In this document: one piece after another, positions 9,725 through 53,858 of the stretch
Layout of the letters: every line of letters begins with the position of its first letter
Numbering within the stretch: position 1 is the stretch's first letter
NCBI RefSeq assembly: GCF_030028105.1
Contig: NC_092383.1
Location: forward strand, 86,943,921 to 87,007,920
Direction of reading: 5' to 3'
DNA from: Mobula birostris
Lineage: Eukaryota
Length of the DNA stretch: 64,000 nt
Position numbers and translations under genes: made by a program
The notes under the pieces: generated by a model
Told to the model about the DNA's origin: nothing
Seen by the model: the letters and a program-made list of their open reading frames with translations, nothing else
Databases searched by the model: none

Positions 9725-9750
9725 TGATAATTTCACTTTTGCTTTTATAG

Positions 9751-9846: not shown

Positions 9847-10809
9847 GTATTCATTACTCATCCGCCCTGTAGAGAATTGATCTCTTGTTATTATATCACA
9901 GAATTGCATTGCTGAAGGTGAAGTCGAACAAAATAATCTTATCATGCTTCAAGTTGGTGGTCTTGCTTAATAGAAATCTGCTTACAACACTTCACCCACA
10001 CTGATCTGAATATTATGACATTGTCTCTTGATTTCCTGCATAAACCCAGCATCAATTTTTAAGCTTTGTATGATCATGAACTGCTCAAAATTCTTTTACC
10101 ATGTTAATATCTCTTCTCGGGCTTCCATCCAGGTACGGGAATCGATGATAACCAATGTTTCGATGACAAGCTCTGCCATCTTCTTCATCATCCCTGGAGT
10201 TGGCAGATTTTGTTATCAAAATGTCAGCTGTAATTGATACCAGTACCTGATTGAAGCCAGAGAAAAGTTTATTCGTCATATATGCCTGGAAAACAAGAGA
10301 TCCTTTTCCATGTTAAAATCTGTTCAATAGATTCAAATTACTGTGTTCCTGTTGTTTATTTCAACAAACAATTCCTAATACATGAATGAAAATGCTTCTT
10401 CATTAAAATTTGTTTTCACAGAAAAATATATCATTTGTTCTGTTTAGAATATAATTTCACTCATAAATTCAGGGTACTAGATTTTCCTTAAGGTGTCAGT
10501 GGTTTAAAACTTTTTTTGAGCGGGAATCAAATAATCTTCAGATCATGATATCCCAATGGAATGATTTTATTGAAAAACATTGACCTGAAATATTAGCTTT
10601 GTTATTCTCCTTGTAGTTGCCGGCTGACCTGTTGAGTATTTCCATCATCTGCAGATTTCATTTCAGACAGGCACACATTTTCCTCATATATTCAGGAATA
10701 TTATTACACAGAGTAATACTGCAATGTTATTCACATTGAGCACAATTATCGACACTGTACAAAGATCTTAAGGACACTGATCAATGGAAAGTAATGCTGG
10801 GTCCTGAAT

Positions 10810-13190
10810 AAAAGTAAATGAACGACTTCTCACTACATGTCCTGAGCACGGTCTTATCATCATGAATACTCTCCTCCACCAGAAAAACAAATTCAAGGCA
10901 TCCTTTGTCATTGTCTGATCTCAGGATTGCCTTCATGTGTAAATATCACACAGGCCATTATTGGCAAAGATGACTGCTGGACAGATTGTTGGCTGATCCC
11001 TCCACCATGTCATCGAGTCATAGAAAAGTTCCGCACACAAACAGGCCCTTCGGTCCATCTAGTCTATGCCAAGACATTTAAGTTGCCTATTCCCATTTAC
11101 TTACACTGGCAACATAGCCCTCCATATTCTTACCATCCACGTACCTATCGAAACTTCTCTTAAATGTTGAAATTGAGTTAACGTGCACCACTTACGCTGC
11201 AGCTCATTCCACACTTCCACAACCATCTGACTGAACAGGTTTTCTTTTCCCTCTTTTTCCCCTTAACCTTTTTACCATTAACCCATAACCTATGATTTCT
11301 AGTTGTAGTCCCTCCCAACCTCAGTGGAAAAAGCCTGTTTGCATATACCCTATCTTTACCCTCATAATCTTGTATACATCTATAAATCTGTCAATCTTCT
11401 CCATTCCAAGGAAAAAAATCTGAACCTATTCAATCTTTCCATATTGCTCAGGACCTCTAGATCCAGCAACATCCATGTCAATTTTCTCCGTACTCTTTCA
11501 AATTTATTTACATCTTTTCAGGAGGTAGGTGACCAAAGATGCACACAAGAATCCAGATTATACCTTACCAATATCTGAAACAACTCCAGCATAACACTCC
11601 ACCCATCTCCTGTACTCAACAGTTTGTTTTTTTTTTTGGTTTATGAAGGCCAAAGTGCTAAAAGCTTTCTTATGACCCTAGCAACTTTTGATGCCACCTT
11701 CGATGAATTATGGACCTGTATTCCCAGATCCTTTGGTTCTAACATAATTCCTCATTGCCCTACTGTTCACTGTGCAGGACCTACCCTGGCTGGTCCTTCT
11801 GAAGTGCAAAACCTCGCACTTGCCTGCATTAAATCCCATCTGCCATTTTTCAGCCCATCTATCCAGTAGATACAAATCTCTCATTGTCCCAATCTTGGTG
11901 TCATCTGTAAATTTGCTGATGCCGTTAATCACATTATCATCCAGATCACTGATATAGATGACAAACAGCAAAGGACCCAGTACCAATCCCTGTGGCACAG
12001 CACATGTCACAGGCCTCCAGTCAGAGAGGCAGACATCTACTACCACTCTCAGGCTTCCGCTACAAAGCCAATGTATCATCCAGTTAACTACCTCATCCTG
12101 AATGCCAAGATCATTGGCCAAGATCTGCCACAGTGAATCCCAATCATGTATAGAATGGACAACAGACTTTTCAACCTCAACCAGTTCAAGACCAAGAACA
12201 AGGTCATCATAAAGCTTCTGTATGCGGATGACAACACCATCACAACACACTCTGAAGAAGACTTCCAATGTATCCTGAATGCCTTTGCCAAGGCATCTAG
12301 TGCCCTAAGTCTTGATTTGAATATAAAAATACACAGATCTTATATCAGCCACCACCTAGCCAGCCATTATTCCACCCTCCATAAACATTGATGATATCAC
12401 CCTTGAAAATATAGATCACCTTCCCTACCTTGGCAGCACTTTCTCCAGAAAAGCAGACATTGACTCAGAGATCAACCACTGCCGGAACAGTGCTAGAGGA
12501 GCATATGAAAGGTTATGGAAAAGGGACTTAGAAAAATCTAAAGGTCTAAACAAAACTGTTGTTCTATAGAGTATTCACCCTTCCTACATTACTGTATGGA
12601 GCTGAATCATGGACCATCAACAGTAGACACCTGAAAGCTCTGGGACAATACCACAAAAGAACCTTATGACAGGTTTTGAGGATCAGCTGGAAGAACAGAC
12701 ACACTAACACCAGTGTACGAGAAGAGTCCAACATGAACAGCATCTCCACTACAATAAGGTAACACCAACCAGATAGATAGGTCATGTTATTCGGATGCCT
12801 AACTCACGTCTCCCCAAACAGATCCTTTACTTCCAGTTGAAGGAAGGTCAACTTCAAAGATAATATTGAAATCGGCCTGAAGAAATTCAAGATTACATCT
12901 AAAAAATGGGAAGATGTTGCATTCAATGGAAGCACTAGGAGAAACCTGTTTAAGACAGAGATGCATTATATGGGAGCAGCCTCTGTGGTGCTGCAGAGAA
13001 CAAGCTGCAGCTGCAAAAGGAGGGAATGAACAACCACAAGACCCAGCAACTAACTATAGGAACCACTTAGTCTTGACCACGTGCACCAGAACATACGGTA
13101 TGCATCCCACATTGGCCTCTACATCCACCTGAGGACTCACAAACAGACAACCCCTTTGGAGAACACCTTACTCGACTCGATTGATCACAC
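10810..13190 (+). mobile_element. Old RTE-clade LINE remnant (endonuclease piece 10810-10985, RT/C-terminus 12125-13190), interrupted by a CR1
   Basis: Translations VNITQAIIGKDDCWTD, YRMDNRLFNLNQFKTK..KLLYADD, and C-terminal ..HIGLYIHLRTH. The 5' piece is also present in the duplicate near 24490-24660. Confidence 0.8.
10990..12125 (-). mobile_element. CR1 LINE 3' fragment nested in the RTE
   Basis: ORF 11708-12268 contains VPQGLVLGPLLFVIYISDLDD..ISKFTDDTK..WAEKWQMGFNAGKCEVLHF. Confidence 0.9.
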
Positions 13191-14769
13191 CACTAAAACG
13201 TGTGAGTTGTATCCTGTTGTGAATTGCAAAGGTCAAGTCACAGGAGGTGAATCTGCAAATCAGAGGAAATACTTTTCTCAACGCTGACCTGTAACTGGAA
13301 CTCGAATACACAATAGAGTGGAGTACAGTACAGCAGAGAAATGAGCCTTTCATCCCAACTCTACCATGCTGAGAGAGATGTGGATTTAAGCTAGACACAT
13401 TCACCTACATTTGGCCCATATTCCACTAAACCTTCCCTATCCAGAGAGCTGTCCACTGTCGTTTAAATGCTGCTATTCTGCCTTCCTTAACCACAGCATG
13501 TCCTACAAATGTACAATCTTCTAATGAAGAGGTTTCCCCTTTTAAATATTTCTCATTCTCCCTAAACATATGCCATTTAGATTTTTAACAATCTCGGATG
13601 GATACACAGAATGTTTTCTCTCATGGGAAGCATGAGAAGAGAATTTTTAAAAATCTAGATATTTACAAAATTCTCATGATTGCATTATGGTAGTTGGAGA
13701 TATTGTCCTGATGAGAACTGGATCAAGAACATCAGGATACTTCTTCCTGCAGTCAATCATCAGTTTTTTGGTTTTGCTAATGTTCAGTGAGAGATAGTTG
13801 TTGTGACAGCATTCAGGCAGATCTTCCATCTCCTCCAATATGCTGATTATCTACACACAAATGCTGGAGGAACTTAGTTGATCAGGCAGCATCTATGGAA
13901 AGGAATAAACAGTTCGCTATTTCAGGCCCAGATCCTTGATTGAATCCAGTTTCAGGTCAGGGACCCTCCTCAGATCTGGATTAAATGTGTAAGAGTGTCA
14001 GTTGAGAAAACAGATCTGCTCTGAGGAATGATGTGTAGGATGAAAGACTATGCTGTTCATTCCCAGGTTATGAACATCTGACTTATGGACACTTCGACAT
14101 ATGAACCAGCTTTTGTAATGGTACTTAGTTCAAAAGTCCATTGTATGTTCATATGTTTACACATGACATAAAGATTGTCGATGTTGTGGATGGTATAGAC
14201 GAGTGTATTTGCATCATTTGCTTTCCTTTGCAGATTGGTAATTTGTCCGTCTTTGTGTGTAGTTTTGATTGATCCTATTGTATTTCATTGTTCTACTGTG
14301 ACTGCCTGTACGAAAATGAATCTCAGGGTGACACATACGTGCAGTACTTTGATAATAAATTTGCTATGAAGTTTTTCAACTTTGATAAGGTGCATAATTA
14401 CTGACGTCCCGTAACACATTTTGTAGAAATGGAATGAGAAAGATACACATGCATGAACATTTCCAGTCACTGTACAAAGGTCTTAAAGGACAACAGGCAA
14501 TGGAAATAAAAGTTGGCTGCTGAATAAAATGAGTGAACTGCAAATTATAGCAGCTTGCATTGGTCATCAGGGTGTGAATCTGCAAATAGAAGGAGTAACT
14601 TTTCTCAGTACTGATCTGTGACTGTGACCCATGAATGTACAATTAAGGGTCTTGAAAATGAGAGAAGCTGAACTGCATTATAATCAGGATAGTATTTGGT
14701 GACATATATGCACTTTGATAATAAATTTAATTTGAATTTTAATCTTTGAAACGTCCTACTCAGGAGGAA

Positions 14770-17700
14770 GAATATCACATGTTACCCTTCACCTGCTTTG
14801 TGAGGACGTGAAGCAATAACACCAGAGTCTGTTTGGAGCTCATTACATCTTCAGCTCAGGGTTATCTGATGGATGTTGGTGAGCCAGAGATAATTCCAGA
14901 TGCAGTGGTCCCACTTGTGAATCTGGACCTGTTAAACCTGAGTCCATTCAGCCCATTGAGTCTGTTCCTCATTCTATTATGGCTGATTTATTATCCCCCA
15001 CAATCCTATTCTCCCCATAACCTTTGACACCCTTACTAATCAAAAATCTATCAAACTCCACTTCAAGTATACTCAATGATGGCCTCCACAGCCATCTGTG
15101 ACAGTGAATTCCACAGAATTGGCACCCTCTGGTCAGCAAGTCACCCACCATAGGAAACATCCTCTCCACATACAGTCCATCTCGGACTTTGGCCCTTCAC
15201 AATTCAAGAGGTTTCAATGCAAACACCACCCTCCCACCCCCCAACACCAGCCATTCTTCTGAACTCCAGCAAGTACAGACTCACAGCGATCAAACACTCC
15301 TCATACGTTAACCCTTTCATTTCTGGGATCATTCTTTGGCACCTCCTCTGGATCTTCTCCAATTACAGCACATACATTCAAAGATAAGGTGCCCAAAACT
15401 GTTTATCATATTCCATGTGCAGCCTGACCAATATTTTATAAAGCTGCAGTTGTTGGATAACTTCACAACAACAGAATAGAAAATGTTTTACAATCCCACT
15501 GTTGTATTGACAGATGTGCACACGATTGGAATTAGGTTTAAACACAGTGCTTAAGTGATGTCTTCACATTTCTACAACAAACTGTTATTGTTGTTCACTG
15601 ATATAGCTGCCGAACAAAAATGCTTTGCTGAAGATGTTTTGTACTTCTGAATTTATTTTCATCAGCATGTGGAACCATGGTTGTTGAGAAGTTTTCCAAG
15701 AGGTGATAGGCAATGCAGGAAGAGACCAGAACAATCTGTATATATATAGCATCCATTGCTACTTCTCTATATTCTGTTTGGTAGGAGAAGTAAAGAAGGC
15801 AGAAGTTCTAACCACATCCATTACTGAGGGTGAACATTACACAGATGACAACAGTGACTGCCACAATAGAGACAGCACTCATACTATACAATGAATTTAA
15901 GCAGGTATACATTCAAAGCTAATATACTGCACTGTTTTCTCCTAAAACAAATGTAGCAAACCCAAAGTAACAAAAGCTCTCCATGTATTCTGAATGATTT
16001 TGTCATTGATCAGTTTATATACTATGTGAAATTAAGTGTTTATACACAATTGTAAAGTCAGCAACAAAAGTTAAGGAAAATATAAACTTAGATCACCTCA
16101 ACCCCCCTCACTACTATGAAATCAAAAGCAACACAAAAAAATGTTGGAGCAACTTAGCAGGTCAGGCAGCATCTATGGAAATGTATAGATAGTCGAGGTT
16201 TCAGGCCGGCCTGTTACATCCCCCGGGATGCCTCCTCCTTCCCTTTCCCCAACGTCCACTCTACTCTCCTCTTAGATTCCTTCTCCAGCACTTTATCTTT
16301 CCCACCGATCTTGTTTCACCTGTCACCTTCCAGACAGCCTCCTTCCCCTCCCCTTCTTTTTATTCAGACGTATTCCCCCTTCCTTCTCAGTCCTGAAGAA
16401 GGGTCTTGGTCCAAAATGTCAACTATCTGTTCATTTCCACAGATGCTGTCTGACCTGTTGAGTTCCTCCAGCATTTTCTGACAGCACTTTGGATTTCCAG
16501 CGTCTGCCAATTTTCTCGTGCGTACAATGAAATCAAAGTTGAACAATTAATATTTTTTAGTTAAACTTCAAGATGGCACTGATAAGTGAAGATTCTGTGA
16601 ACAGCTCAAATGGGAATCATAGAATATGCCCGCTTTGGGCTGCTACAGTATCCCAGTGATATTGAAACTAATTCTGATTCTGTGTAAGTTCTCCAATATG
16701 TGTGACATGTGAGAATTGTTATCCCTTGTACTGAAACTCACCGCAGACTTCATCTGCCCCAGGCATGAATCTGGATGGATCACACTTTGACTAACGTTGA
16801 AAGTTCCAACCTGGTGAACAGGGATGTTGGGAAATTAGCAGCTGAGAATCTGAGCAAAGATTTACAGGGTCGAGGGTCAAGCAGACCATGGGGGTGAAAT
16901 AGTTAAGAGAGAAATGCCTTCTCTTTGGACAAATGTGACCTGTCCATTTACTGTGCCCTTTGATTCTATGAGAAATAGAACATCCAGGGCCTTTCTACTC
17001 ACACTCACCATTTTCTGTCAACATGGAGCTGATTTGGTTTAAGAACAGATCTGACATCGAGTTTACCCATTGCGAATGAGTAGCTCCGTTCAGGAAGTTT
17101 TCCACTAACATCAAACCAAAGCAAAGTGACATCCCATCAGAGGTCTTGAAATTGCACTGACAGATGGAATAGAATTCAGAAAAGGTGAGCTTTAAAGGTT
17201 CCTTCAAAGAGCGGACACTGCTTTCAGAGAGGAGAGGGAATGAAGTGAAGTACTGTACGCTGAGTTTGCATGAAAAGCCCCTTCTACATCACACCTATTT
17301 CTTATTTTGCTCCTTTCTCAGTAGCAAGTTCCCCAAAACACGTTTGATTGAATTATCACCAAGGCAGATCCAGAACAATGTACAAATCTTGGAGTGTAAT
17401 TCCATATCTCCCCAAAATTTGGAACAAAGTGAGATGGTAAAATACGTGGTGAAGAGACCTTATGGGATTGGGCCAGGATTGAACATTCAAAAATTCATGT
17501 TACAAACGTATAAAAATATGGTTAGGACACACTTGGGGAAGGTGTAGTTGTGTCTGTGGGAGCCACAGAACACTGGATATTTGCATAATCAAAGGTACAA
17601 CTTAATGTCAGAGAAAAGTATACAATATACGTCCTGAAATGCTTTTTCTTTGCAACCATCCACGAAGACAGAGGAGTGCCCCAAAGAATGACAGGCAGTT

Positions 17701-19470
17701 AAATGTTAGAACCCCAAAGTCTCCCCCTGCTCCCCCCTCCTGCCCATAAGCAGCAGGGAGCAACAATCCCCCCTCCGCCCCAGCAAAAAAAAGCATCAGC
17801 ATCGCCACCAAGCACTCAAGTGTGAACAAAGCGATAGCATAGACACAGACTTGCAGTTACCCCAAAGACTTGGTATTCAACACACCACAGGTTCCCTCTC
17901 TTCCTAATAAGGGAGAAAGAGATGTCTCCATTTTCCCAGCGAGCGGGGAGACGAAACAAGCAACTCATTGGTTTATGATGTTAAAAGTCCTTTACATCAC
18001 TTTTATCGAGCTCTGTGCCTGAAGATCACAAAGACCCTGGATCTCCAGGCACACAGCAGATATCCCGACTCCCCCGACGACACATGGGACTCCTGTCATG
18101 ACACTGACCCTCAATCTGCCTGTCTCCAGAGCCCCGAGATTCTAGGCTTCTGAATTCGAGCTGGATTCTTAGGCCAAGCCTTTGGTGTGCTGAACAATGG
18201 TCAGTTATGGAACCCCGAGAGTGGGTCCCATTCCCACAAAGAACCAAAGTCAGTGTATAACTCCAGGTCAGGGTTTTCAAAAGAACCCTGAAAGGGAAAA
18301 ATAGAGATATTAAAATGGAAATAGAGCTGTTTCAGAAGATGCAAGCAAAGGAGTCGCTGTTAGGCGCCATTAACCCTCCTAAGCGCCGCCTTCTAAGACC
18401 CCAAAATAAATGTGGGTTTTGGGGGTCTCACATCATTTTTAGAACAGCATTTGAATATATGTAGACACTAAAGGTTTTGAAATCTGGAGTTCTGAGAAAA
18501 CACTTGGAGGACAACAGTGAGCGAAGCAGCATTTGTCAGGGTGACAGAAATTGCTGATGGTTTGGTTGAAGACCCTGCATTCAGTATGAGTGGAGAGGGA
18601 GATAGAGTAAATAGGAAGAGGGGGATGGGTCCACTAGGTGGTTGGGGACTGAGGAGGGGTGAATAATGAAGTGGAATGGGGAGGAAAAGGGGTGGAGTTT
18701 GGAGGTGAGTAAGAAGTGAAAGCACATAAGGAGAATAGTGTGGAGCCAGGTGGGGGGAGAATATGTCCAGGTGGAGAAAATTCCTGGAGGCTGTTAAGCA
18801 GAAACACCAGGTCTACCATTGTTGGAATCCGATCTTACTCTGCAGGGATCACTATGACAATTGATGCTATTATCTTGAAATCAATGTCTTTCCTGAGCCA
18901 TTCCAGTAGGGCAACTGGCAAAAAACATACCTAGATCTGGAGTCAAAAATAAACCAGGGTGGGAAGGGATGAGAGATTTCTGTCCCTCAAGGCCTTTCCA
19001 ATCCAGATGGGATTTTGACCATCTAGTAGTTAATCATTATTATGATTGATATGTGTTTTTTTTCAATTCCTGAAATAATTTCAATGCTTAATGTATCCCT
19101 ACAGAAATTAAATCACACCTGGATTTCTGGACACTAAAATGGTGTCCACTGTTGCAGCATCTTCTAACTACACATAGAAATACTTTACAGGTAAAATACT
19201 TTATAATTTCCATCAGAACCAGAGGGCACAGTTTGAGACATCATGTGGGGTTTCTTTCTGCAGCTAATAAACTGCATCTTTCTGTACATTTGAAAGTTCG
19301 ACATGATTCGAGATAATTGAAAGTTCAACACTGCTGCTCTCCCTCAGTACTGCACTGGAAGGTCAGCCCTGGGTTTCTGCTCAGGACTCTGGAGTGGGAA
19401 GTGATTCCACAATGTACTGACACAGGGGATAGAGCACTGACACAGCTGACACAGTAACAGCACTGACAAG
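14770..19470 (+). repeat. Segmental duplicate of 38110-42690 (5' flank of a receptor gene unit)
   Basis: Collinear blocks: 14770-14945 vs 38110-38270; 15670-16130 vs 38585-39050; 16690-17500 vs 39220-39595 plus 40802-41410; 18410-18620 vs 42365-42570; 19365-19470 vs 42590-42690. The copies differ by copy-specific TE insertions. Confidence 0.85.
16127..16526. mobile_element. Penelope-derived short element, specific to this duplicate copy
   Basis: TSD atgaaatcaaa (16116-16126 and 16527-16537). Absent at the paralogous site near 39040. Confidence 0.75.
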
Positions 19471-25429: not shown

Positions 25430-28395
25430 CATTGGGACTGTTTTGATGATAATGACATGTCTACCAAACAAAAAATCTTTAATCCAATTAAAAACTCTCC
25501 CACAACCCCCATCTTGTGCAGTTTAATTAACAATCCTTCCTTTCACATCATATCATGGACTTTTTCAATGTCAAAAAACACTGCAACTACTGACTCTTTA
25601 TTTGCCTGAGCCTTTCTTATTTCAGTCTCTAACCTTATCACTGAGTCCATGGAATTCCTTCCCTTCCTAAAACCACTCTGGTAACTTGCCAGCATTCCTC
25701 TCTTCTCAACCTCATACAATAACCTTTCTGTTATCATCCTTTCCATTATCTTACATATATTTGATGTTAATGCTATTGATCTGTAGCTAGTGGGTTTTCA
25801 CGGATCCTTGCCAGGTTTCCTAATTGGAATTACTACTGTTTCTTTCCATGCACTTGGTAATCTGTCCTCCTCCCACACTCTGTTATAAAAATGCAGCAAC
25901 TTCAAGAGTGCTCCTTCTCCTAGATTTTTCAGTATAACATAGCATATCAGATCTTTCCCTGGGGAGGTTGGTCTTGATGTCTTTCTTGCTCTCACCATTT
26001 CTGCCAACGTAAATGGATCATCAATTGTATCATCTGTTTCTTCCCTCCTGTTAACACAGCTAGGTGTTGATCCATTGTTCTTTCCCTTCTCCTTCTCCCT
26101 TCTTCAGACAAATTTTCTGATCTGTGTATCTGTACAAACGACTTGGCCATGATCTCAGCCTTATCCCTACTGGAGACTGCTGTTTCCTTCTCCGATATTA
26201 TTACTGGATATTCCCATTCCCTTCTATTCCCCCCCCCCCCCATCCTCTTAATCATTCCCCATACCTCTCCCACAGGTGTTGTTCTTCCTATTTTGTTGCA
26301 AAAACTCCTCCAACTTGCCCTTTTAGCTTGATGTACAGTTATTTTCACCACTGCCTGTGCCTTCTTATACTGAATCAAATGCTGCATATTATGGGTTCTT
26401 TTAACTAGCCTGAATGCTCTATTTCTGTTTTTTACAGCTTGACAACCCACTTTGCGATTCCACCACTTGGTCTTACTTCAATTATTTCACCCACTGAACA
26501 TAAAACTGGGTAGTGATCATTGCCTACTGCTGAAGCAGTCCAAACCCCCCAGTTACTAACACCAGCCAACGTATTAGACACCAACGTAATATCTAATACT
26601 GACTCAGTTCTTGTTGTTAAGTTTATCCTTGTTCCTCTACCATCATTCATGCACACCAAATCCCTTTCTTCCATCAAATCTTCAATTACCTTTCCATTTG
26701 AATCTGTAATCGTATCCCCCATATTGTGCTATGAGCATTGAAATCTGCACACCACACTAGTTTATGTCTGTTTTGTCTTTGTATCCTTAATAGGCTGTCC
26801 ATATCCAACGTTTTACATGGATTGTAGTAGTTAATTATAACCATTCCCTCCCCTCTTTCCCACACTCCCACCACTATGTATTCCTGATCATCTCCTTTTT
26901 CCAATATCCTATATGGTATACCTTGTTTGATTAACATTGCACAACCCCCTCCTCCCCCTAGAATTCTGTCTTTCCTTATCATTGTATACCCATACACCAC
27001 AAAGTCTAAAGTTGGTTTCAACCAAGTTTCCTGAATACATACTACATCTGGTTTTACAACCATTTCTTTAATAAAGTGCTTGAATTCCTGGCTATTGGCC
27101 AGTAAGCTCCTTGCATTCCATTGCAAAAGAATCACCATAATTAGTATTAACCAACCCATGACACTTCCTGGTTTGACTGATTAGTGAGGTTCTTCCTTAC
27201 TTCTTCCCACGTCAGTCCTATTAACCCTAAATGGTTCATTGCTGCTTTGACCACCAGCTGAATTTTATCACTTTCTGACTTTACCTCAGCTGTACTATTA
27301 ATCACTCCTGCAATGAATGTGACTGGAGCCTTTTTGTCTACATAAATCCTGTCATGTGTTCTTTGTTGCAACTCTCGCATCCCTATTGCTCCCTGTTCAT
27401 TAGGAGCGTTATTCTGTTCTTTTGATATTCTTACAGCTTCTGCATAAGTGATCTTTCTTTTCACTCTTATTTCTTGAAATTTATTCTCCCATCTCATAAC
27501 CTCACACCCACTATATGCAACATTATGAGCTCCTCCACAATTGCAGCATTTTAGTTGCACTCCTGTTCCGCACTTTCCATATTCATGATCACCCCCACAT
27601 CTAGCACATCTCCTCTGCCTTTTACAGTTTTTAGCTTGTGTCCAAACCTTTGATAATTATAGCACCTCAATGGCTTTGGCACATACACCCTTACTGGGTA
27701 ACTCATGAAACCCAGGAACACCTTCCTTGGCACTCTTTCTTCTTCAAATTCAATCGATACTGTTTCACCTTCTTTTTTCATTCTTTCCTTTCTTGTTTTC
27801 AATCTTTGAACATTTATTACTTTTCCTCCTTTGATATTTCTCTTTAACTCCTCCATATTTGTACTTATTGGTACCCTCGTGATCACTCCTTTACATACAC
27901 CGCTATTTCGTGCCCTCACCCTCCTTGAGTATTCCACCTTGCATTTTCCTATCTCTTTTAGCTTGAGTGCTTTCTCAAGTTGTTCCTCATTGGCACATTT
28001 TACCAATAGGTTGCCATCATTAAGGACTTCTGCAAATACTATTTCTCCTATCTTACTTGCCAGAGTTGCTGTTAGCCCAAACAGGTTAATGTTCTTCACG
28101 TTTCCTTGAGCCTTCTCATTAAACATAATTATGACAACACCTTGTCTCTGAACTTGTTTATCTCCCTCACTTTCAGAGCTCTATCCACTGTCATTTCTCA
28201 TTCTTTTATTTCTTTTGTCTTGGTTTTCAATCATCCATCCCCTCACTATCTCCTCATTCCCTTTATTTCTCCCTTCACAATAATCCATTTCTCCCCAGCT
28301 GCCTACCCCTGATCCCAAATCGCTATCCACTCCTTCTCCACTCTCTTTCACTCAACCCCGCCCCCCGCCTTTTCCGTCATTACTTTACCTGTGCA
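25430..28395 (-). mobile_element. I-clade (Nimb-like) LINE: 5' UTR, gag-like ORF1 with CCHC knuckles, ORF2 endonuclease and RT start; 3'-truncated
   Basis: ORFs 27551-28126 and 27147-27560 (KPLRCYNYQRFGH, CCNCGGAHNVAYSGC), 26686-27159 (LLQWNARSLL..CIQETWL), 25798-26007 and 25543-25746 (SYQSGFRKGRNSMD..FFDIEKVHD). Confidence 0.88.
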
Positions 28396-28790: not shown

Positions 28791-29529
28791 GTCATTGAGG
28801 AAATATTGCCTGAAAAACCTGTGGAATTTTTTGAGGAAAGTACAATGGCCTTGCTTCCAAATGAGACCATAAGATATAGGAGCCGAATTAGGCCATTTGG
28901 CTCATCGAGATGATTAAGGGGGAAATTACAATTTTATTTACTCGGGCAGAATGGCAGCGGCACTATTGTTTTCAGTTCCACAACCAGTAATACAAGCAAT
29001 GTTCTTCTACATGCTTTGGGCCTGAGACTGCAAGATAAATTAATCTCTACAAATATTCTGTAATAACTTAGACATGAAAGTTGATATTCATTTTTATTTT
29101 GGAAGTAGATACTTGGAATGGATAATGGATAACCAACGGGGATAAATTCACTCAACTTCACTTGCCCCAACATTGAAATGTTCCCACAACCAATGGACTT
29201 ACTTTCAAGGACCCTTCATCTTATGTTCTTGATATTTACTTATATCTTCATTTTTGTGTTTGCATAAGTGTCTTCTGCACTCTAGTTGAACACTCTAGTT
29301 GGGTGGTCTTTCATTGATTCTGTGGTGGTTATTATTCTGTAGATTTATTATGTCCATGGGAAAATAAATCCAAGTTTTATATGGTGATATACATGCACTT
29401 TGAAAATAAACCTACTTTGAATGATAAGAATCAGGGTTCACATCCTGTTGTTGTGTAACAGATTCATACGGTCCTAGAGATGTACAGCACAGACAAAGAC
29501 CATGTGGCTTTCCATTGCACATCCATCTA

Positions 29530-29930
29530 CAGTACTGTGCAAATATCTTATGCCCCCTAGATTTTTATTGTTTCAGATGGTATGGGCTCCACAGAGTACT
29601 GATCTCGACATCATTGAGGCTGTCTGGGATTACCTGGAGAGGCAGAAACAAGTGAGACAGTCAAAGTCTGCAGACGAACTGTGGCAAGTTCTCCAATATT
29701 CTTCGAACAACCCACCAGCTGATTTTCTTATAGAATTGCATGACAAAATCCCTAGAGGAACTGATGAAGATTTAAAGGCAAAAGATGGTCACACCAAATA
29801 TTGATTTCATTTAATTTTACTATTGTTTCTTGCTCCTTGTTATTCAGAAACATTTCATTTCATTGTTTTTGAAAGCATCTTCACTATACAGAATTATTTT
29901 ACATGTGCAGAAGACTTTTGCACAGCACTG
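29530..29930 (+). mobile_element. Tc1 internal-deletion derivative
   Basis: TIRs cagtactgtgcaaa / tttgcacagcactg, TA on both sides, transposase C-terminus WAPQSTDLDIIEAVWDYL..LKAKDGHTKY. Confidence 0.9.
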
Positions 29931-31718
29931 TATATAAAGCCTACCTTCCAGCACATGGCCCATTGCTTTTATTGACAGTTGATTTAAGACTGCATTCAGA
30001 CACTTCACAAACACTGACTGTAACTCTGTTTCCACCACTCTCAGGGTAAAAACAATCCCTTCAAATCTCTTCTAAGTCTCTGTCATCTAGATTTATTCAC
30101 TTCTGGGAATGGGAAAGTTTGCTGTCCTCTATCCAACCTGTACATCTCATAATATATATCCCTCAATCATATCCACTCTTAACAACCAATGCTCAATGAA
30201 AAGAAAGACTAGTCTCTTCTAATGTTTATCCTTTGGAAATTAGAATGATTTGCTGCATTCAAAGGTTGTCATGCAGTATTCTCCATGACTACTCCGTCGC
30301 TAACCTCCTCCCATGGTGTGAGATGACTTACATTTACGTGCTTGCCAAACCTGAGGGTGCAGCTTTCTCTTGCTGTGATATTACCTGACATAACATTGAC
30401 TCAGAGATTGCAGGTAAAGCATTAAGCAATAAGGTAACAACTTGCTGTGTTAGCCAAAGTCTCAATGACAGTAACTGTAGAAAAAAAATGTGTAAGCTGC
30501 TGATAACATCCAAACAGGTAATTTTTCAGTGAATAGCATTTTGAAGAATTACACAGGATCTTGATCAGCTGGGTATTTGAGCTGAGGAATTGCAAATGGA
30601 GTCCAATTCAGATACATTTACCACCATATACAACCCTGAGATTTGATTTCATGCGGGCATACTCAGTAAATCCAATAGCCATAATAGAATCAAGGAATGG
30701 CCGCAATGAAAGATGACACCATTGTCTTGAGCCAATTTGTTTTTAATCCTACATGGCTCCTACTTTCTTATCATCATAAGTGCATTATAATCTGGTCATT
30801 TTCATTGCCCTGATTGATTTACCCCATCGCTTCTCTAACTTACAAAGTCTCTTGTTGGCATTTCAGTTCTTCTGTTCTGCATGGGACTTTTTGAAACTGT
30901 TGAACTCAAATTCACTTTTCCCACTGTTGTCCAGGGAATAAAGAGATACTTTTGATCAACCCATGATTATTTTTCTTGGGTCGATATTGAGTCATTTATC
31001 ATTCATTATGTTTCAAATCTACCTACATGGTCTCAATTTCTGTCTTCTTCACAGAATCGGAATCAGGTTTAATATCACTGGCACATATCATAAAATTTGT
31101 TGTTTTGTGGCAGCACTACAGTGCAATACATAAAAAACTATAAATGACAAAAATAAATATATATTCATAAGTAGTGCAAAAATAAAGCAAAATATTGTGA
31201 GGTAGTATTCATGGGTTGGTTTATTTTGTCTTCAGAAATCTGATGGTGGAGGGGAAGAATCTGTTCCTAAAATATTGAGGGTATATCATCATGTTCCTCT
31301 ACCTTCTCCCTGATGGTGGCATTGAGAAGAAATTATGTCCTGGGTGACATGTCCATTACAGCTGTCCACTTCCTCCAATGACATTTCAGTATCATAAAGG
31401 CACCTCTGCAATTCTAACTTCTTTATTTTTCCTAAATCCATTTTCACTGTGTAGCTCTCAATTCAAAGACCTCATCATTTGCACGTGACCAAGTCCCAGT
31501 GATTATGTGTCTGTAACTGGTGATCACAGGTTGTTCCCCTTCCCCCATCCTGTCATTCAGTCAACACCAGTTTACTCTTCTAGTTGAACTCCTCTGGCTC
31601 TGCTTTCTTACCTCACTCCACTCCACTAAGGTTACAGAAGAAACAGAAGGTAAATGTTTCAAACACAAAGCCATCTTGTTTCATTTCATCAATTCTGTAT
31701 CTCTTCCCCTTTACTCAG

Positions 31719-32064: not shown

Positions 32065-32103
32065 AGTGGCAATGTATCAGATCCTCACAACCTGGTCCAT
32101 TAG
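32065..32103 (+). pseudogene. Paralogous tail exon of remnant B'
   Basis: Acceptor ttgccttttgcag, then SGNVSDPHNLVH-stop, aligning with 9751 onward. The 3' UTR homolog follows (32180-32410 vs 9880-10110). Confidence 0.65.
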
Positions 32104-32625
32104 GTAAAGTGAAGGCTTCTGACTGCTCGAATTTTGCACCCAGGTAAAATATTCTTCCCACTTTATGAAAAAATTAACCTCTCTTGTCATTAAATTATTA
32201 ACTTCATGAAGGTGAAAAAATAATGTTACCGTACTTCAATACAGTGACTTATTTTTAAGCATTCCATTTCCAACATGTCACCCCCACTGATCTCAATATT
32301 GTGGCACCTTTTATTTTTTGCCACAACAACTATTTTTAGCCCTGTCACAGCTGTGAACTGCTTAAGACCATTTTACTCTATTAAACTCTCTTCTATGGAT
32401 TTAAATGCCAGAGGTCATTGCTGTTAGATATTCCAATGATTAATAAGCTATCAGTTAAGATACTTGCTTATAAACTGCTGGTGTTAATAAGTCATTTATC
32501 CTTTAGGCTTAGATGAGAATAAAACTTTATACATGGCAAACAGATCACATTCGGGCTCCTGGATTTTCTTCAGGGAGTCAGGACCATAAGACCATAAACA
32601 CAGGAGCAGGTTTAAGTCATTCACC

Positions 32626-34054
32626 TGTTTCAGTCATTCCACAAAATAAGTTTGAACAGCATTTCAAAGATTCCAAGCTGAAGCCTGCAAATATTCAACT
32701 AAGAACCTATCCAGGAGAAAAGGCAATTCCTGTGGGAATGACATTTGTAACTGTGAAATACAACAACAGCAACAAGCCACATTGACAACTACTACTTGGT
32801 TGGAAATCCGCTCAATAATTTGCATGTCATAACCCCTGCAAAGAAGCCAACTGAAAACAAATTTAAAAAGGTACTGGATGATGCCACAACTGTCTCCATG
32901 CAGAAAAACATGAACCATTGCCTAGCAGAGGACTAACCAGTGTTGGTGCCAACCTCTGTACTTCTGGTTGGAAAGCATATTGGAACAAGGAAGGACCATG
33001 CTGTTCAGTAGAAGTGTGAAAGTGACGAAAGCACTGGTCTGACTACAACGGTTTTTGTGGGCAACATATCAGTGAAAGTTTCTGGCATGTTAGTCAGACA
33101 GTTATCTGTGAAATATGGCTTGGTTTTAAGCTAGGAGAGAGTTCAAGAAGTTTCAAGAAAGTTGCAAGCATTCGGCTTTTGTGAATACAAAGAATCTACT
33201 CTGCGTGCATTATGTTTGTTGCATGAACTTCAAGTAAGAAACTAAAAGCTGCTTGTAAAAATAGATGCCCAGCTGGATTAATGGAAGGTCAAAAGGAAAG
33301 GAGTCAATGGAGAGTCGAAAGCAGGGGATCCATCAAATGATGATGTGGATGAGAAAACCAAAAGGACAGATCAGATTGTAATGGGAGAAATAGAAGGATT
33401 CAAAAGAGAATACTTCAGTGAACTCATTGCACCTTCCCAACATCAAGATGCATAAACTAAAAGAAGAGAAAGGAAGGAGAAGAAAAATGTTCAGAGCTGT
33501 CAGAACCACTTCCTGCAGTTTTAGAGTCAGTTCCTGCAACCACCACAGAGGACACCCTGGAACCTGAGATTTCACAGCCAAAAGTTTTAACTGCCAGGCA
33601 GAGTGATCTGATTTGTCAGGAAAAATGTTGTCCCACAAGAGCAGGAAATCCTTCACAGCGATTAATTCTTTAGATCTGAATGGGACAAATTAAAATTTAC
33701 TATGCCATGGATATCTGCAAATAGTAGTTGCATGATATATTATACTTTGTATATGATTGAGATACATACCATATTGAGTTGCAATTTACAGCTAAGCAGG
33801 GAGGAGTGTTGTGTATTTAATATTTTAGTAATATTTGAATAATATTGTACATGTTGTTTGATTAAGTACTCTTGTTTGTTTAAATAATTAAATACAGATT
33901 ATAAGTAAAAGACTTGAATTGCATATATCATGACACCAACACATGATACATGCGCACCTCACTTAAAGTAAAAACACAAACTAAGATTTACATTTCTCGG
34001 CTCTGTTGCTTTCCTTTGAATTATTTTACTGTTTTGGAGCTACAAACCATAACA
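32626..34054 (+). mobile_element. Gypsy LTR retrotransposon remnant: protease/linker (32626-32897), integrase tail (about 33487-33670), PPT and 3' LTR (33807-34054)
   Basis: VSVIPQNKFEQHFKDSKLKPANIQLRTYPGEKAIPVGMTFVTVKYNN, then CSELSEPLPAV..CPTRAGNPSQRLIL-stop. PPT agggaggag at about 33798-33806 directly precedes TGTT...AACA. The 5' LTR, gag, RT, RNase H and integrase core are missing. Confidence 0.82.
32940..33486 (+). pseudogene. RBM25: Intronless RBM25 (RNA-binding motif protein 25) fragment covering the RRM; disabled
   Basis: VLVPTSVLLVGKHIGTRKDH..TTTVFVGNISVKVSGMLVRQLSVKYGLVLS*ERVQEVSRKLQAFGFCEYKESTLRALCLLHELQ..KLLVKIDAQLD*WK..REYFSELIAPSQ..RRERKEKK matches vertebrate RBM25 residues about 53-241 as I recall them. 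Several in-frame stops (e.g. TAG 33132-33134). Not in the ORF track. Confidence 0.92.
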
Positions 34055-34272
34055 AGGACCTTTCATCAAACACAGTTTCACTTCAGGGATCCATCCTCAG
34101 ATCCGGCTTAGAAGTGGACGAGTGTTGGTTTAGAAAGCAGATCTATTCAGAGGAGAGCTGTGTAGGATAAGAGACAATACAGTTCATTCCCAAGTTATGA
34201 CAATCTGACTTATGGACACTCCTACAAATGAACGAGCCTTGTTAATGTTGCTGAATTCAAAACCCTACTGTG

Positions 34273-34632
34273 CAGTAATGTGTTAAAGTCGCAGACATTG
34301 TAGATTTTTTATATGGTTTCAGAAGCTATGGCTTCCACAGGGCCCTAATCTCAACATCAGTGAGGCTGTTTGCGATTATCTGGAGGTTCAGAGGCAAGCA
34401 CAACAGCCAAAGTCTGGAGAAGAACTGTGGCAACCTGCCAGATAACTTTCTTATAAAACCACACAACAGTGCAGCTAAGAGGATTGATGCAGTTTTAAAG
34501 GCAAAGGATAGTCTCACCAAATATTGATTTAATGTTTTGTTTTTACTGTTTACTTCTCATTTCATTATTTCTGAAAGCATCTTCACTTTACAGAATATTT
34601 TGATATATGCCTACGACTTCTGCACAGTACTG
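34273..34632 (+). mobile_element. Tc1 internal-deletion derivative (same family as 29530-29930)
   Basis: Degenerate TIR cagtaatgtgttaaagtc / gacttctgcacagtactg, with a transposase C-terminal remnant. Confidence 0.75.
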
Positions 34633-35749
34633 TTTGCACGTGACACAAAGATTGTCGGTATTGTGGATGGTCTAGAGTCTTGTCACAAATTACAACAGGG
34701 TAAAGACAGGATGCGGCGCTGGGTGCAGAAGTGATTGATGGAGCTTAACACAGAAAAATGTGAAGTGATACACCTTGGATGATCGAACTTGAAGGCAGAT
34801 TACAAGGTTAATGGCAGGATTCTGAGCAATGTGGAGGAACCGAAAGATATTGGGTTGCAAGTCCGTAGATTCCTCAAAGTTGCTGTGCAAGTTGAAAGGG
34901 TGTTAAAGAAGGTGTGTGATGTGTATGAATATGGAGGGCTATGTGCTGTGTAGGAGGGAAGGATTAGATTCATCAAGAAGTATAGATTGGCACAATATTC
35001 TGTGCCAAAAGGCCTGTACTGTGCTGTTCTATGTTCCTATAAATAACAGAACGAGTTTTCTTTCCTTCCACTTTTCAAAATTACTCTTTCACCTCAGTTT
35101 TATATGCAGTTATTGCCTTTCATTACAATAGTATGTAAGTATGGATAACATATTGAGTGATATCTGTTGTGTTTTCTGACATAAGGGTAAAATTGACTTA
35201 CAGGTATCTGTAAAAACAGACCCATTCATTCCTCAGGGACGGTCTGTATGGAGGTTGGTTAAGACTGACCTGATCAGTTGATAGGTAAAGCCCTGCCCAC
35301 CAGTGAGCACATCTACAAAGGAGACCTGCCACAAGAGAGCAGAATCCATCATCGAGGACCCACATCATCTAGACATGCTCTCTTCTCGCTGCTGCCGAGC
35401 AGAAGGAGGTACTGGAGCTCAGTTCCCGAACTAACAGGTTCAGGAACAGGGCAGCCACCAGGCTCCTGAACTGGGGGGATAACTTCAGTCACCTCAACAC
35501 TGATATTATCACTGAACACAGCCTATGGAATCACTTTCAAAGATTCTACATCTCATCTCCTCCATATTTTATCCTTATTTATCTATTGTATTTCCATAGT
35601 TTGTCTTCCTTTGCACGTTGTTTGTACATACCTGTATGTAGTTTTTAATTGATGCTACTGTATTCGTTTGCACTACTATGAATGCCTGCAAGAAAATGAA
35701 TCTCTGGGTGAATCTTATGGTGACACAAACAATCTGTATTACAGTGCAG

Positions 35750-50943: not shown

Positions 50944-53858
50944 ATACAGAGAGGCTTTGAGGAAAGAGAAGCAGAATAAATGGTGTAAAGACAGTAAGGT
51001 AGAAGGGCTGAAATGTGTGTATCTCAATGCAAGAAGCATCAGGAACAAAGGTGATGAACTGAGAGCTTGGATACATACATGCAATTATGATGTAGTGGCC
51101 ATTACAGAGACTTGGCTAGCACCAGGGCAGGAATGGATTCTCAATATTCCTGGATTTCAGTGCTTTAAAAGGGATAGAGAGGGCGGAAAAAGGGAAGGAG
51201 GGGTGACATTACTGGTCAGAGATACTATTACAGCTACAGAAAGGGTGGGTAATGTAGCAGGATCCTCTTTTGAGTCAATATGGGTGGAAGTCAGGAACAG
51301 GAAGGGAGCAGTTACTCTATTGGGGGTATTCTATAGGCCCCTGGTAGCAGCAGAGATACAGCGGAGCAGATTGGGAGGCAGATTTTAGAAAGGTGCAAAA
51401 ATAACAGGGTTGTTATCATGGGTGATTTTAACTTCCCTAATATTGATTGGCACCTCATTAGTTCCAAGGGTTTAGATGGGGCAGAGTTTGTTAAGTGTGT
51501 CCAGGACTGATTCCTGTCACAGTATGTGGACAGGCCAACCAGGGGGAATGCCTACTAGATTTAGTACTAGGTAATGAACCGGGTCAGGTCACAGATCTCT
51601 CAGTGGGTGAGCATCTGGGGGACAGTGACCACCGCTCCCTGGCCTTTAGCATTATCATGGAAAAGGATAGAATCAGAAAGGACAGGAAAATGTTTAATTG
51701 GGGAAAGGCAAGTTATGAGGCTAGAAGGCTAGAACTTGCAGGTGTGAATTGGGATGATGTTTTTGAAGGGAAATGCACTATGGACATGTGGTTGATGTCT
51801 AGAGATCTCTTGCAGGATGTTAGGGATAAATTTGTCCCAGTGAGGAAGTCAAAGAATGGTAGGGTGAAGAAACCATGGGTGACAAGTGAGGTGGAAAATC
51901 TAGTCAGGTGGAAGAAGGCAGCAAACATGAGGTTTAGGAAGCAAGGATCAGATGGGTCTATTGACGTATATAGGGAAGCAAGAAAGGAGCTTAAGAAGGG
52001 GCTGAGAAGAGCAATAAGGGGGCATGAGAAGGCTTTTGCGAGTAGGGTAAAGGAAACCCCAAGGCATTCTTCAATTATGTGAAGAAAAAAAGGATGACAG
52101 GAGTGAAGGTAGGACCGGTTAGAGATAAAGGTGGGAAAATGTGCCTGGAGGCTGTGGAAGTGAGCGGGTCCTCAATGAATACTTCTCTTTGATATTCACC
52201 AATGAGAGGGAACTTGACGACGGTGAGGACAATATGAGTGAGGTCGATGTTCTGGAGTATGTTGATGTTAAGGGAGAGGAGGTATTGGAGTTGTTAAGAT
52301 AGATTAGGACAGATAAGTCCCCGGGGCCTGATGGAATATTCCCCAGGCTGCTCCACGAGGCGAGAGAAGAGATTGCTGAGCCTCTGGCTAGGATCTTTAT
52401 GTCCTCGTTGTCCACAGGAATGGTACCGGAGGATTGGAGCGAGGCGAATGTTGTCTCCTTGTTCAAAAAAGGTAGTAGGGATAGTCCGGGTAATTATAAA
52501 CCAGTGAGCCTTACGTCTGTGGTGGGAAAGCTGTTGGAAAAGATTCTTAGAGATAGGATCTATAGGCATTTAGAGAATCACGGTCTGATCAGGGACAGTC
52601 AGCATGGCTTTGTGAAGGTCAGATCATGTCTAACAAGCCTGATAGAGTTCTTTGAGGAGGTAACCAGGCATATAGATGAAGGTAGTGCAGTGGATATGAT
52701 CTATATGGATTTTAGTAAGGCATTTGACAAGGTTCCACACAGTAGGCTTATTCAGAAAGTTAGAAGGCATGGGATCCAGGGAAGTCTGGCCAGGTGGATT
52801 CAGAATTGGCTTGCCTGCAGAAGGCAGAGGGTGGTGGTGGAGGGAGTACATTCAGATTGGAGGATTGTGACTAGCGGTGTCCCACAAGGATCTGTTCTGG
52901 AACCTCTACTTTTCGTGATTTTTATTAACGACCTGGATGTGGGGGTAGAAAAGTGGGTTGGCAAGTTTGCAGACGACACAAAGGTTGGTGGTGTTGTAGA
53001 TAGTATAGAGGATTGTCGAAGATTGCAGAGAGACATTGATAGGATGCAGGAGTGGGCTGAGAAGTGGCAGAAGGAGTTCAACCCGGAGAAGTGTGAGGCG
53101 GTACACTTTGGAAGGACAAACTCCAAGGCAGAGTACAAAGTAAATGGCAGGATACTTGGTAGTGTGGAGGAGCAGAGGGATCTCAGGGTACAAGTCCACA
53201 GATCCCTGAAAGTTACCTCACAGGTGGATAGGGTAGTTAAGAAAGCTTATGGGGTGTTAGCTTTCATAAGTCGAGGGATAGAGTTTAAGAGTCGCGATGT
53301 AATGATGCAGCTCTATAAAACTCTGGTTAGGCCACACTTGGAGTACTTTGTCCAGTTCTGGTCACCTCACTATAGGAAGGATGTGGAAGCATTGGAAAGG
53401 GTACAAAGGAGATTTACCAGGATGCTGCCTGGTTTGGAGTGTATGCATTATGATCAAAGATTAAGGGAGCTAGGGCTTTACTCTTTGGAGAGAAGGAGGA
53501 TGAGAGGAGACATGATAGAGGTATACAAGATATTGAGAGGAATAGATAGAGTGGATAGCCAGTGTCTCTTCCCCAGGGCACCACTGCTGAATACAAGAGG
53601 ACATGGCTTTAAGGCAAGGGGTGGGAAGTTCAAGGGGGATATTAGAGGAAGGTTTTTTACTCAGAGAGTGGTTGGTGCGTGGAATGCACTGCCTGAGTCA
53701 GTGGTGGAGGCAGATGCATTGGTGAAGTTTAAGAGACTACTAGACAGGTATATGGAGGAATTTAAGGTGGGGGCTTATATGGGAGGCAGGGTTTGAGGGT
53801 CGGCACAACATTGTGGGCCGAAGGGCCTGTACTGTGCTGTACTATTCTATGTTCTATG
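50944..53858 (+). mobile_element. CR1 LINE, 5'-truncated, relatively young; RT/C-terminal ORF 52399-53796 (465 aa) open
   Basis: Endonuclease 50957-51388 (YLNARSIRNK..ITETWL), RT motifs QHGFVK, YMDFSKAFDKVPH, VPQGSVL, FADDTK, and 3' tail ctattctatgttctatgt. Confidence 0.95.

What the first reader, a model, noticed from the sequence alone, without database searches (positions are those of the whole stretch)
32626..34054. RBM25 mRNA fragment captured inside a Gypsy LTR retrotransposon
Seen: a Gypsy protease region, then about 550 bp of intronless RBM25 coding sequence (RRM) in the same orientation, then directly the Gypsy integrase tail, PPT and 3' LTR. The RBM25 piece has no poly(A) tail and no TSD of its own, it stops mid-CDS, and it sits where RT, RNase H and the integrase core should be. 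Established: this layout is the signature of LTR-mediated retroposition by template switching on a co-packaged host mRNA, whereas LINE-made retrocopies carry a poly(A) tail and TSD. Inference: the purine-rich gagaagaaa at the 3' junction (about 33477-33485) may be the microhomology used. I know of no report of this in cartilaginous fish, but could not search.
Basis: partly seen in the sequence, partly recalled or inferred. Interest (0 to 1): 0.8.

Follow-up and report, generated by a model that had tools for sequence, protein, structure and literature searches.

The report
Dead LTR-element copy carrying RBM25 exons
This is one old, broken and front-truncated copy of a repeat family found in hundreds of copies in at least four related fish genomes: an LTR retrotransposon whose inside was long ago replaced by a spliced piece of the host splicing-factor gene RBM25. 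The capture is real, but it did not happen at this locus.

Summary
Window 32882-33488 (+) is a spliced, intronless piece of RBM25. It holds the last 10 nt of one coding exon, a 48-nt alternative micro-exon, and four further complete exons that include the RRM. It is 82.6% identical to the exons of a shark RBM25 locus, where the same exons lie spread over 15 kb. It has six in-frame stops, no poly(A) tail and no target-site duplication.

Upstream (32626-32881) lies a retropepsin-like remnant. Downstream lie a short internal tail, a polypurine tract (33790-33806) and a 248-nt LTR (33807-34054).

Contigs from four organisms pile up exactly over 32626-34054, the RBM25 part included, and paralogous contigs cross the 5' junction. 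The chimera is therefore itself an amplified, non-autonomous repeat family. This copy is 5'-truncated, decayed, and shared with at least one relative.

The original capture by reverse-transcriptase template switching is inferred, not shown. A splice-mediated 5' junction was tested and rejected. The Gypsy assignment and the proposed microhomology remain untested.

The scan has already noted this family on other DNA of this genome (s1-145115 and others). This is a new member of a known kind (LTR-mediated retroposition).

The parts
32626..32881 (+). Internal remnant of the LTR element: the C-terminal half of a retropepsin-like protease plus a linker. The copy is cut off at 32626, and an unrelated repeat lies upstream.
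   Evidence: Depth rises about 170-fold in bin 32586-32666. In run X10, 122 contigs continue upstream of 32626 with a sequence that reads ..ELDTG... 236 contigs read ..QQATLGLYVV.. after 32767. The nearest named Atlas clusters are retropepsin families at 0.89-0.92, which is weak. Pfam and PDB gave nothing.
32882..32891 (+). Last 10 nt of the RBM25 coding exon that ends ..MAPATT. The 5' junction of the capture lies just before it.
   Evidence: 8 of 10 bases match L007 directly upstream of the micro-exon. Chance of this is about 4e-4. No significant match lies further upstream: score 19 against a shuffle mean of 16.6.
32892..32939 (+). RBM25 alternative 48-nt micro-exon (VSMLYTMNRCPTEGKQ in sharks). 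It has an in-frame stop at 32934.
   Evidence: Matches L006 3628-3675, a proper exon with cag|..|gtaac sites lying 9 kb upstream of the next exon. It is present in the mRNA L007/P0131.
32940..33110 (+). RBM25 exon encoding VLVPT...RQLLA (start of the RRM).
   Evidence: 80.7% identical to L006 12772-12942. The exon borders are conserved in L001, L003, L004 and L005. phmmer representatives hit RBM25 at E 8.6e-6.
33111..33168 (+). RBM25 exon encoding KCGLVLSWKRVQGASGKLQ.
   Evidence: 87.9% identical to L006 15899-15956. Also matches L001 2216-2274 and L003 942-1000.
33169..33311 (+). RBM25 exon encoding AFGFCEYKE...KKKGVNG (end of the RRM). It has 6-nt and 12-nt deletions relative to the shark gene.
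   Evidence: 86% identical to L006 17305-17465.
33312..33488 (+). RBM25 exon encoding DTK...KKKEKKEE. It ends in a pure purine run. The 3' junction lies within about 33482-33491.
   Evidence: 81.3% identical to L006 18572-18748. No match to the next RBM25 exon (DDISAMEMEED) or to the L006 intron.
33489..33789 (+). 3' internal region of the LTR element. An open frame runs to a stop at 33669-33671, followed by non-coding sequence. The name 'integrase tail' is unverified.
   Evidence: Lies inside the high-depth block. In run X1, contigs join 33233 or 33519 or 33552 to 33761-33798, which links RBM25 and the LTR end in other copies (tables 5 and 5c). No family hit.
33790..33806 (+). Polypurine tract (agctaagcagggaggag).
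   Evidence: Read directly from the sequence. It lies immediately 5' of the LTR start.
33807..34054 (+). 3' LTR of 248 nt, with termini TGTTGTG...CATAACA.
   Evidence: The termini form an inverted repeat, 6 of 7 bases. In each run, 278-371 contigs run on before 33807 with unlike sequence (agreement 0.34-0.36), as expected of LTR starts with many different flanks. Depth falls about 10-fold in bin 34044-34124.

Best explanation
Window 32626-34054 is one old, 5'-truncated, decayed copy of a non-autonomous LTR-retrotransposon family. Its internal region (everything between the protease and the end of pol) is replaced by a spliced fragment of host RBM25 mRNA. That fragment holds 10 nt of one exon, an alternative micro-exon, and four exons that include the RRM.

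Shown here:
- The fragment is host-derived and spliced.
- The whole chimera, RBM25 included, is high-copy in four organisms, with a shared 5' junction.
- This copy is truncated, carries six stops, and has changed evenly at all three codon positions.

Inferred:
- The chimera arose once, in an elasmobranch ancestor. A reverse transcriptase copying element RNA inside a particle switched onto a co-packaged RBM25 mRNA at the purine-rich end of one exon, and switched back 607 nt further 5'.
- The product kept the LTRs, PBS, packaging region and PPT. It was then copied many times by the proteins of autonomous relatives.
- This locus is one such insertion, later cut at its 5' side.
For: - Host origin and splicing. 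Identity to H. perlo exons is 82.6%. Five exon-exon joints are colinear with a locus whose introns measure 1.1-9 kb. One search shows conserved exon borders in four more genomes.
- Direction of transfer, host to element: the piece carries the gene's own alternative micro-exon and isoform choice (it lacks the 12-nt CFTQ extension, like P0130).
- Family status: laid 13-17 thousand contigs per run in four organisms. Depth steps occur at 32626 and 34054. RBM25 bins in X1 stand at 5.8-75 thousand, against 38-66 for the single listed X1 contigs. Paralogous contigs bridge the 5' junction: X1 record 4, X10 records 13 and 14, X5 record 20, X9 records 27-29. Another copy reads ..GGGCAAACAG|GTGTCGGTGCC.. 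at the micro-exon/exon joint.
- Age and truncation: X5 record 19 crosses 32626 with 4 differences in 299 nt. X9 record 26 and X10 record 10 cross it at about 90% identity. No 5' LTR is present.
- Neutral decay: differences by codon position are 32/36/48, against 13/2/53 between the two real genes. There are six stops.
- No LINE hallmarks.
- The kind is described in Tan et al. 2016, including re-mobilisation of such chimeras.
Against: - No autonomous parent and no second full copy could be read, so both template switches and any microhomology are inference.
- Only the 5' junction is shown bridged by clearly paralogous contigs. For the 3' junction, the listed bridging contig (X5 record 21) is probably the ortholog, and X9 record 31 stops at 33483 and runs on unlike.
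- The 3' junction coincides with an exon end, which could point to another mechanism.
- The depth figures are not copy numbers, as the tool itself warns.
- The superfamily (Gypsy) is not established.
Confidence: 0.85

Rival explanations
1. Capture by read-through transcription and splicing (the oncogene-transduction type, Swain and Coffin 1992). An element sitting in an RBM25 intron was transcribed into the gene. Its RNA was spliced onto RBM25 exons, and only the 3' junction was made by a template switch.
For: When only protein alignments were used, RBM25 homology seemed to start exactly at an exon's first base, 32940. The 3' end of the insert coincides, within about 6 nt, with the donor end of an exon.
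Against: The mRNA L007 shows that homology runs through the micro-exon and 10 nt (8 of 10 bases) into the upstream exon. The 5' junction is therefore mid-exon, not at an acceptor. The 3' coincidence is also explained by the 30-nt purine run at that exon end, a plausible place for pausing or microhomology.
Confidence: 0.08
2. The capture happened at this locus, so this copy is the primary chimera.
For: None beyond the architecture itself.
Against: The same chimera lies on many contigs in four organisms, at 80-95% identity to this copy. This copy lacks its 5' half. It is about 19% diverged from shark RBM25, with flat codon-position differences.
Confidence: 0.02
3. An ordinary LINE-made processed pseudogene of RBM25 that landed inside or beside old LTR-element debris.
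For: LINE elements with endonuclease and RT are present in the window.
Against: There is no poly(A), no target-site duplication, and the 3' end of the mRNA is missing. The flanks and the insert are amplified together, with a shared junction.
Confidence: 0.02
4. The captured RRM was kept because it served the element, for example as a Gag-protease-RRM fusion that binds RNA. On this reading it is not a passive filler.
For: The upstream frame and the RBM25 frame coincide in this copy from 32784 on. All indels inside the RBM25 part are multiples of three. The family is very successful.
Against: There are six stops, and change is equal at all codon positions in this copy's lineage. Two or three in-frame indels are weak statistics. 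No other copy could be examined.
Confidence: 0.05

Closest known systems
LTR-mediated retrocopies: chimeric LTR retrotransposons with a captured host mRNA (Tan et al. 2016, Genome Res 26:1663, PMC5131818; also maize Bs1 and human HERV-K/FAM8A1, both cited there)
   Same: An intronless, partial host transcript replaces part of the element's internal ORFs in the same orientation. It has no poly(A) and no target-site duplication of its own. The chimera can be mobilised again as a non-autonomous element.
   Different: Here the chimera reached hundreds of copies and is shared by several species, whereas the published animal cases have one or a few copies. Microsimilarity at the junctions, their key argument, could not be examined here. 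The host is a cartilaginous fish, which that study did not sample (no occurrence of 'shark').
Acutely transforming retroviruses (host gene transduction by read-through plus recombination)
   Same: Spliced host exons lie inside a defective LTR-bearing genome that depends on a helper.
   Different: The 5' junction here is not at a splice acceptor. There is no sign that the insert is functional. The element is a genomic retrotransposon family, not an infectious virus as far as can be seen.
LINE-made processed pseudogenes
   Same: An intronless copy of an mRNA, decayed by stops.
   Different: It lacks the mRNA 3' end, the poly(A) tail and the target-site duplication. It is embedded in, and amplified together with, LTR-element sequence.

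Membership tests
LTR-mediated retrocopy / chimeric non-autonomous LTR element | Host gene fragment without introns | tested here: met
   Five exon joints are colinear with L006, where the introns measure 1.1-9 kb. Exon borders are conserved in four other genomes.
LTR-mediated retrocopy / chimeric non-autonomous LTR element | Insert flanked on both sides by discontinuous parts of one LTR element, in the same orientation | tested here: inconclusive
   Both flanks are co-amplified with the insert, and the block borders are sharp. A PPT and an LTR lie downstream. A retropepsin-like piece lies upstream. That both flanks come from one parental element could not be shown without a parent.
LTR-mediated retrocopy / chimeric non-autonomous LTR element | No poly(A) tail and no target-site duplication around the insert | tested here: met
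   The longest A-run is 5, inside RBM25's own purine run. The longest shared word at the two junctions is 5 nt.
LTR-mediated retrocopy / chimeric non-autonomous LTR element | Short shared bases (microsimilarity) between element and mRNA at both switch points | not testable with these tools
   This needs natural copies of the autonomous element. Two word searches found none and the window holds none.
LTR-mediated retrocopy / chimeric non-autonomous LTR element | Two LTRs and a target-site duplication of the whole element | tested here: not met
   This copy has only the 3' LTR. It is cut at 32626 and there is no second LTR copy in the window. This is a property of this copy, not of the family.
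Ty3/Gypsy superfamily | Gypsy-type RT and the domain order PR-RT-RNaseH-IN | not testable with these tools
   RT, RNase H and IN are absent from the family's chimeric form as seen here. Only a half protease remains. Pfam gave nothing and the Atlas lead is to retropepsin families in general.
LINE-made processed pseudogene | 3' end of the mRNA with a poly(A) tail, plus a target-site duplication | tested here: not met
Read-through/splice transduction (oncogene-capture type) | 5' junction exactly at a host splice acceptor | tested here: not met
   Homology continues 10 nt into the upstream exon.
Functional RBM25 paralogue | Open reading frame and purifying selection | tested here: not met
   Six in-frame stops. 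Codon-position differences are flat at 32/36/48.

The most novel reading that the evidence does not exclude
The RBM25 RRM was not a passive passenger. Fused in frame behind Gag-protease, it may have given the defective element an RNA-binding module that helped its RNA get packaged, or that interfered with host splicing. That could explain why this one chimera out-multiplied its relatives across several elasmobranch genomes. The only hints are the shared frame across the 5' junction, the in-frame indels, and the family's success. This copy's own lineage looks neutral.
Probability: 0.05. Interest if true: 0.75.

Novelty: new member of a known kind. Interest (0 to 1): 0.33.

Why it matters
- **Evidence for the process.** The family shows that LTR-mediated capture of a host mRNA operated in cartilaginous fishes. 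It also shows that such a chimera can become a high-copy repeat shared by several species, whereas published animal cases have one or a few copies.
- **Annotation.** Hundreds of RBM25-like RRM fragments will mislead gene prediction, orthology calls and RNA-seq mapping for RBM25 in these genomes. They could also be a source of antisense or small RNAs against an essential splicing factor.
- **Phylogeny.** The family is a dated, single-origin marker usable for elasmobranch phylogeny.
- **This locus.** Taken by itself, it is a dead fragment.

Tried and rejected
- **Pfam on the short open pieces** of the protease, RBM25 and tail regions gave nothing. The pieces are too short and decayed.
- **PDB sequence searches** of three pieces gave nothing useful.
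- **Word-based protein searches** with the 57-aa RBM25 piece and the 52-aa protease piece gave no candidates. No other family copy or parent could be fetched this way.
- **Splice-made 5' junction.** I proposed this after seeing RBM25 protein homology start exactly at an exon's first base. I rejected it when the shark locus and the mRNA showed an extra micro-exon and 10 nt of the upstream exon.
- **RBM25 homology further upstream,** suggested by a tblastn extension to 32811 with two teleost proteins. This is not significant at DNA level.
- **Continuation into the next RBM25 exon** after 33488. This is only purine-rich similarity and not significant.
- **The 'NTGAG' motif just upstream of 32626** as the protease active site. 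I rejected this because contigs of other copies diverge at 32625/32626. That stretch also looks to me, from memory, like a repeat common in shark genomes.
- **A Gypsy relative elsewhere in the window.** Only LINE-type EN/RT ORFs were found.
- **Atlas search of the tail** gave no usable hit.
- **Protein hits that look mammalian or human** (for example P0001, P0002, P0005). Their contigs were not looked up.

Full report
**What is in the sequence.** On the + strand, 32626-34054 reads as follows.
- A short coding remnant.
- About 600 nt that translate, through six stops, into the N-terminal part of RBM25.
- A 60-codon open frame.
- A purine run.
- A 248-nt unit that starts TGTTGTG and ends CATAACA.

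Pfam and PDB searches of the short open pieces found nothing. Identification therefore had to come from longer relatives.

**The RBM25 part is real, host-derived and spliced.**
- A phmmer search of the 40-aa RRM piece against 1.8 billion representatives returned only RBM25 N-termini (E 8.6e-6, 71% identity).
- Several of those hits are genomic ORFs that run from the exon into its intron. Their contigs (L001, L003, L004, L005) show the same exon borders in four genomes...ag|GTN YTG GTN CC... and ...CTT GCN|gtaagt. The window reads straight across both borders.
- A word search with a teleost RBM25 fragment produced 'RNA-binding protein 25-like' of the shark Heptranchias perlo (P0057), on a 27.6-kb contig (L006).
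- Its cluster gave an elasmobranch RBM25 mRNA contig (L007, protein P0131).
- All 129 RBM25 proteins then in hand align to 32940-33485. P0131 (fetched afterwards, E 3e-79, 63% identity) and P0057 (E 1e-77) are the best matches.

The window piece is colinear with five exons of L006:

| Exon | L006 | Window | Identity |
|---|---|---|---|
| 48-nt alternative micro-exon | 3628-3675 | 32892-32939 | 77% |
| First RRM exon | 12772-12942 | 32940-33110 | 81% |
| Second | 15899-15956 | 33111-33168 | 88% |
| Third | 17305-17465 | 33169-33311 | 86% |
| Fourth | 18572-18748 | 33312 to about 33488 | 81% |

- Overall identity is 82.6%.
- Against the mRNA L007, homology begins at 32882. It runs 10 nt (8 of 10 bases) into the preceding coding exon..MAPATT.
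- A similar micro-exon appears in a teleost isoform (P0045).
- The piece is closest to shark RBM25: K2P 0.23 to H. perlo, 0.31 to L007 and 0.51 to a teleost. This fits a capture within cartilaginous fishes.

**The two ends of the insert.**
- 5' end: no significant similarity to RBM25 lies upstream of 32882. The junction sits mid-exon.
- 3' end: homology ends in the 30-nt purine run that closes the exon (...AAGAAAGAGGAG|gt in L006). It does not continue into the next exon or into the intron. The exact point is uncertain within about 33482-33491.
- There is no poly(A) (longest A-run 5). No direct repeat of 6 nt or more lies at the two junctions.

**The flanks.**
- Downstream, the purine tract 33790-33806 abuts the 248-nt unit 33807-34054, whose ends form an inverted repeat.
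- In each of four runs, 278-371 contigs match from 33807 onward but carry unlike sequences before it (agreement 0.34-0.36). This is what LTR starts with many different neighbours look like. Depth drops about 10-fold after 34044.
- Upstream, other copies continue beyond 32626 with a sequence that reads ..ELDTG.., and read ..QQATLGLYVV.. after 32767. A language-model search puts the 52-aa piece nearest to retropepsin families (0.89-0.92, low shared-feature counts).
- This supports 'LTR retroelement protease'. It does not establish Gypsy.
- The 'integrase tail' has no tool support.

**It is a repeat family, not a local event.** I laid Logan contigs of four organisms on 32100-34500 at 80% likeness or more. 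The organisms were the source, a close relative holding 37% of the sampled words, and two more distant ones.
- 13-17 thousand contigs were laid per run.
- Summed depth jumps from a few hundred to 41-87 thousand in bin 32586-32666, and falls back after 34044.
- The RBM25 bins stand at 5.8-75 thousand in X1, where single contigs have depth 38-66. The other three runs show similar ratios. The tool warns that this is not a copy number. I read it only as 'hundreds, roughly'.
- Paralogous contigs at 80-91% identity cross the element/RBM25 junction in all four organisms: X1 record 4, X10 records 13 and 14, X5 record 20, X9 records 27-29.
- One X1 contig reads ..GGGCAAACAG|GTGTCGGTGCC.. at the micro-exon/exon joint.
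- Other X1 contigs join the RBM25 part to the PPT/LTR region, with internal deletions.
- The chimera as a whole was therefore the transposing unit.
- This agrees with an earlier follow-up of this scan on another copy (s1-145115). First-stage notes also describe at least six further copies in this genome. I used those notes as leads only.

**This copy.**
- It lacks everything 5' of the half protease. No second LTR exists in the window.
- The break at 32626 is crossed by a contig of the close relative with 4 differences in 299 nt. Contigs of the two more distant organisms cross it at about 90% identity. The truncated insertion therefore most likely predates their divergence.
- It differs from most laid contigs by a 2-nt indel at 32768 and a rearranged stretch at 32767-32818.
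- The RBM25 part has six stops: 32934, 33009, 33132, 33243, 33279 and 33453.
- Its differences from the shark gene are spread evenly over codon positions (32/36/48). The two real genes differ almost only at third positions (13/2/53). This is neutral decay.

**Mechanism.**
- Shown: a spliced host mRNA fragment lies inside an LTR-element skeleton and was amplified as a unit.
- Inferred: the origin was two template switches of reverse transcriptase between element RNA and a co-packaged RBM25 mRNA, as described for animals by Tan et al. 2016 (PMC5131818). The purine run at the 3' junction is a plausible switch site.
- I tested the main rival, a 5' junction made by splicing of a read-through transcript. 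It failed because the junction is mid-exon.
- The coincidence of the 3' junction with an exon end remains unexplained beyond the purine run.

**Novelty and limits.**
- The kind is known. One full-text search found no paper that links RBM25, retrotransposons and sharks.
- The unusual aspect is the scale of amplification and the spread across species.
- I built no consensus of the family. That step is referred.
- Contigs of protein hits that look mammalian were not fetched.

Noticed in passing
L006:3628-3675 and L007:272-331; window 32892-32939: RBM25 of sharks has a 48-nt alternative micro-exon (VSMLYTMNRCPTEGKQ) between the Pro-rich first coding exon and the RRM exon. An alternative acceptor adds 12 nt (CFTQ): isoforms P0057 and P0131 have it, P0130 lacks it. 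A teleost isoform (P0045, Puntigrus) has a similar insert (ALYTPISGVFFKSK) at the same place, so the micro-exon may be old.
   Followed up: partly
L006 (Heptranchias perlo JAYJKY010001031.1), gene 3634-18790: The annotated 'RBM25-like' models X1 and X2 start in the micro-exon and end by reading into the intron after the ...KKEKKEE exon. That is nearly the same exon range as the captured fragment. This may only reflect the ends of the 27.6-kb contig. It could also mean that transcripts of the repeat family shaped the gene model.
   Followed up: no
window 29502-29975 and 34308-34633: Two Tc1/mariner-like transposase C-terminal remnants lie in the same orientation, 70-82% identical over the matched blocks and 4.7 kb apart, on either side of the region (families D3, D4, D8). 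The identification is by reading the ORFs only.
   Followed up: no
window 26686-27159 (-), 50957-51388 (+), 52399-53796 (+): LINE-type ORFs are present: an Exo_endo_phos endonuclease (E 4e-12 and 1.7e-8) and an RVT_1 reverse transcriptase (E 1.8e-32). A 465-aa RT ORF is still open.
   Followed up: partly
window 32598-32640: At the 5' truncation point, the last 15 nt of the upstream repeat (gtttaagtcattcac) resemble the first 15 nt of the element (gtttcagtcattcca), matching at 13 of 15 bases. This may be microhomology used in the deletion or rearrangement that cut the element, or it may be chance.
   Followed up: no
window 34073-34200 and 13947-14073: The sequence just after the LTR end is another repeat, with an 80% identical copy elsewhere in the window. 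One X1 contig at 82% identity spans 33940-34196 (record 7). At least one other place in the genome may therefore join the LTR end to the same kind of flank.
   Followed up: no
window 33477-33557: This 81-nt bin, just after the 3' junction, has 20 times the contig depth of its two neighbours in all four runs. Many joints skip 33519-33613. The stretch may be shared with a more abundant element, or its neighbours may be variable. This is not explained.
   Followed up: no
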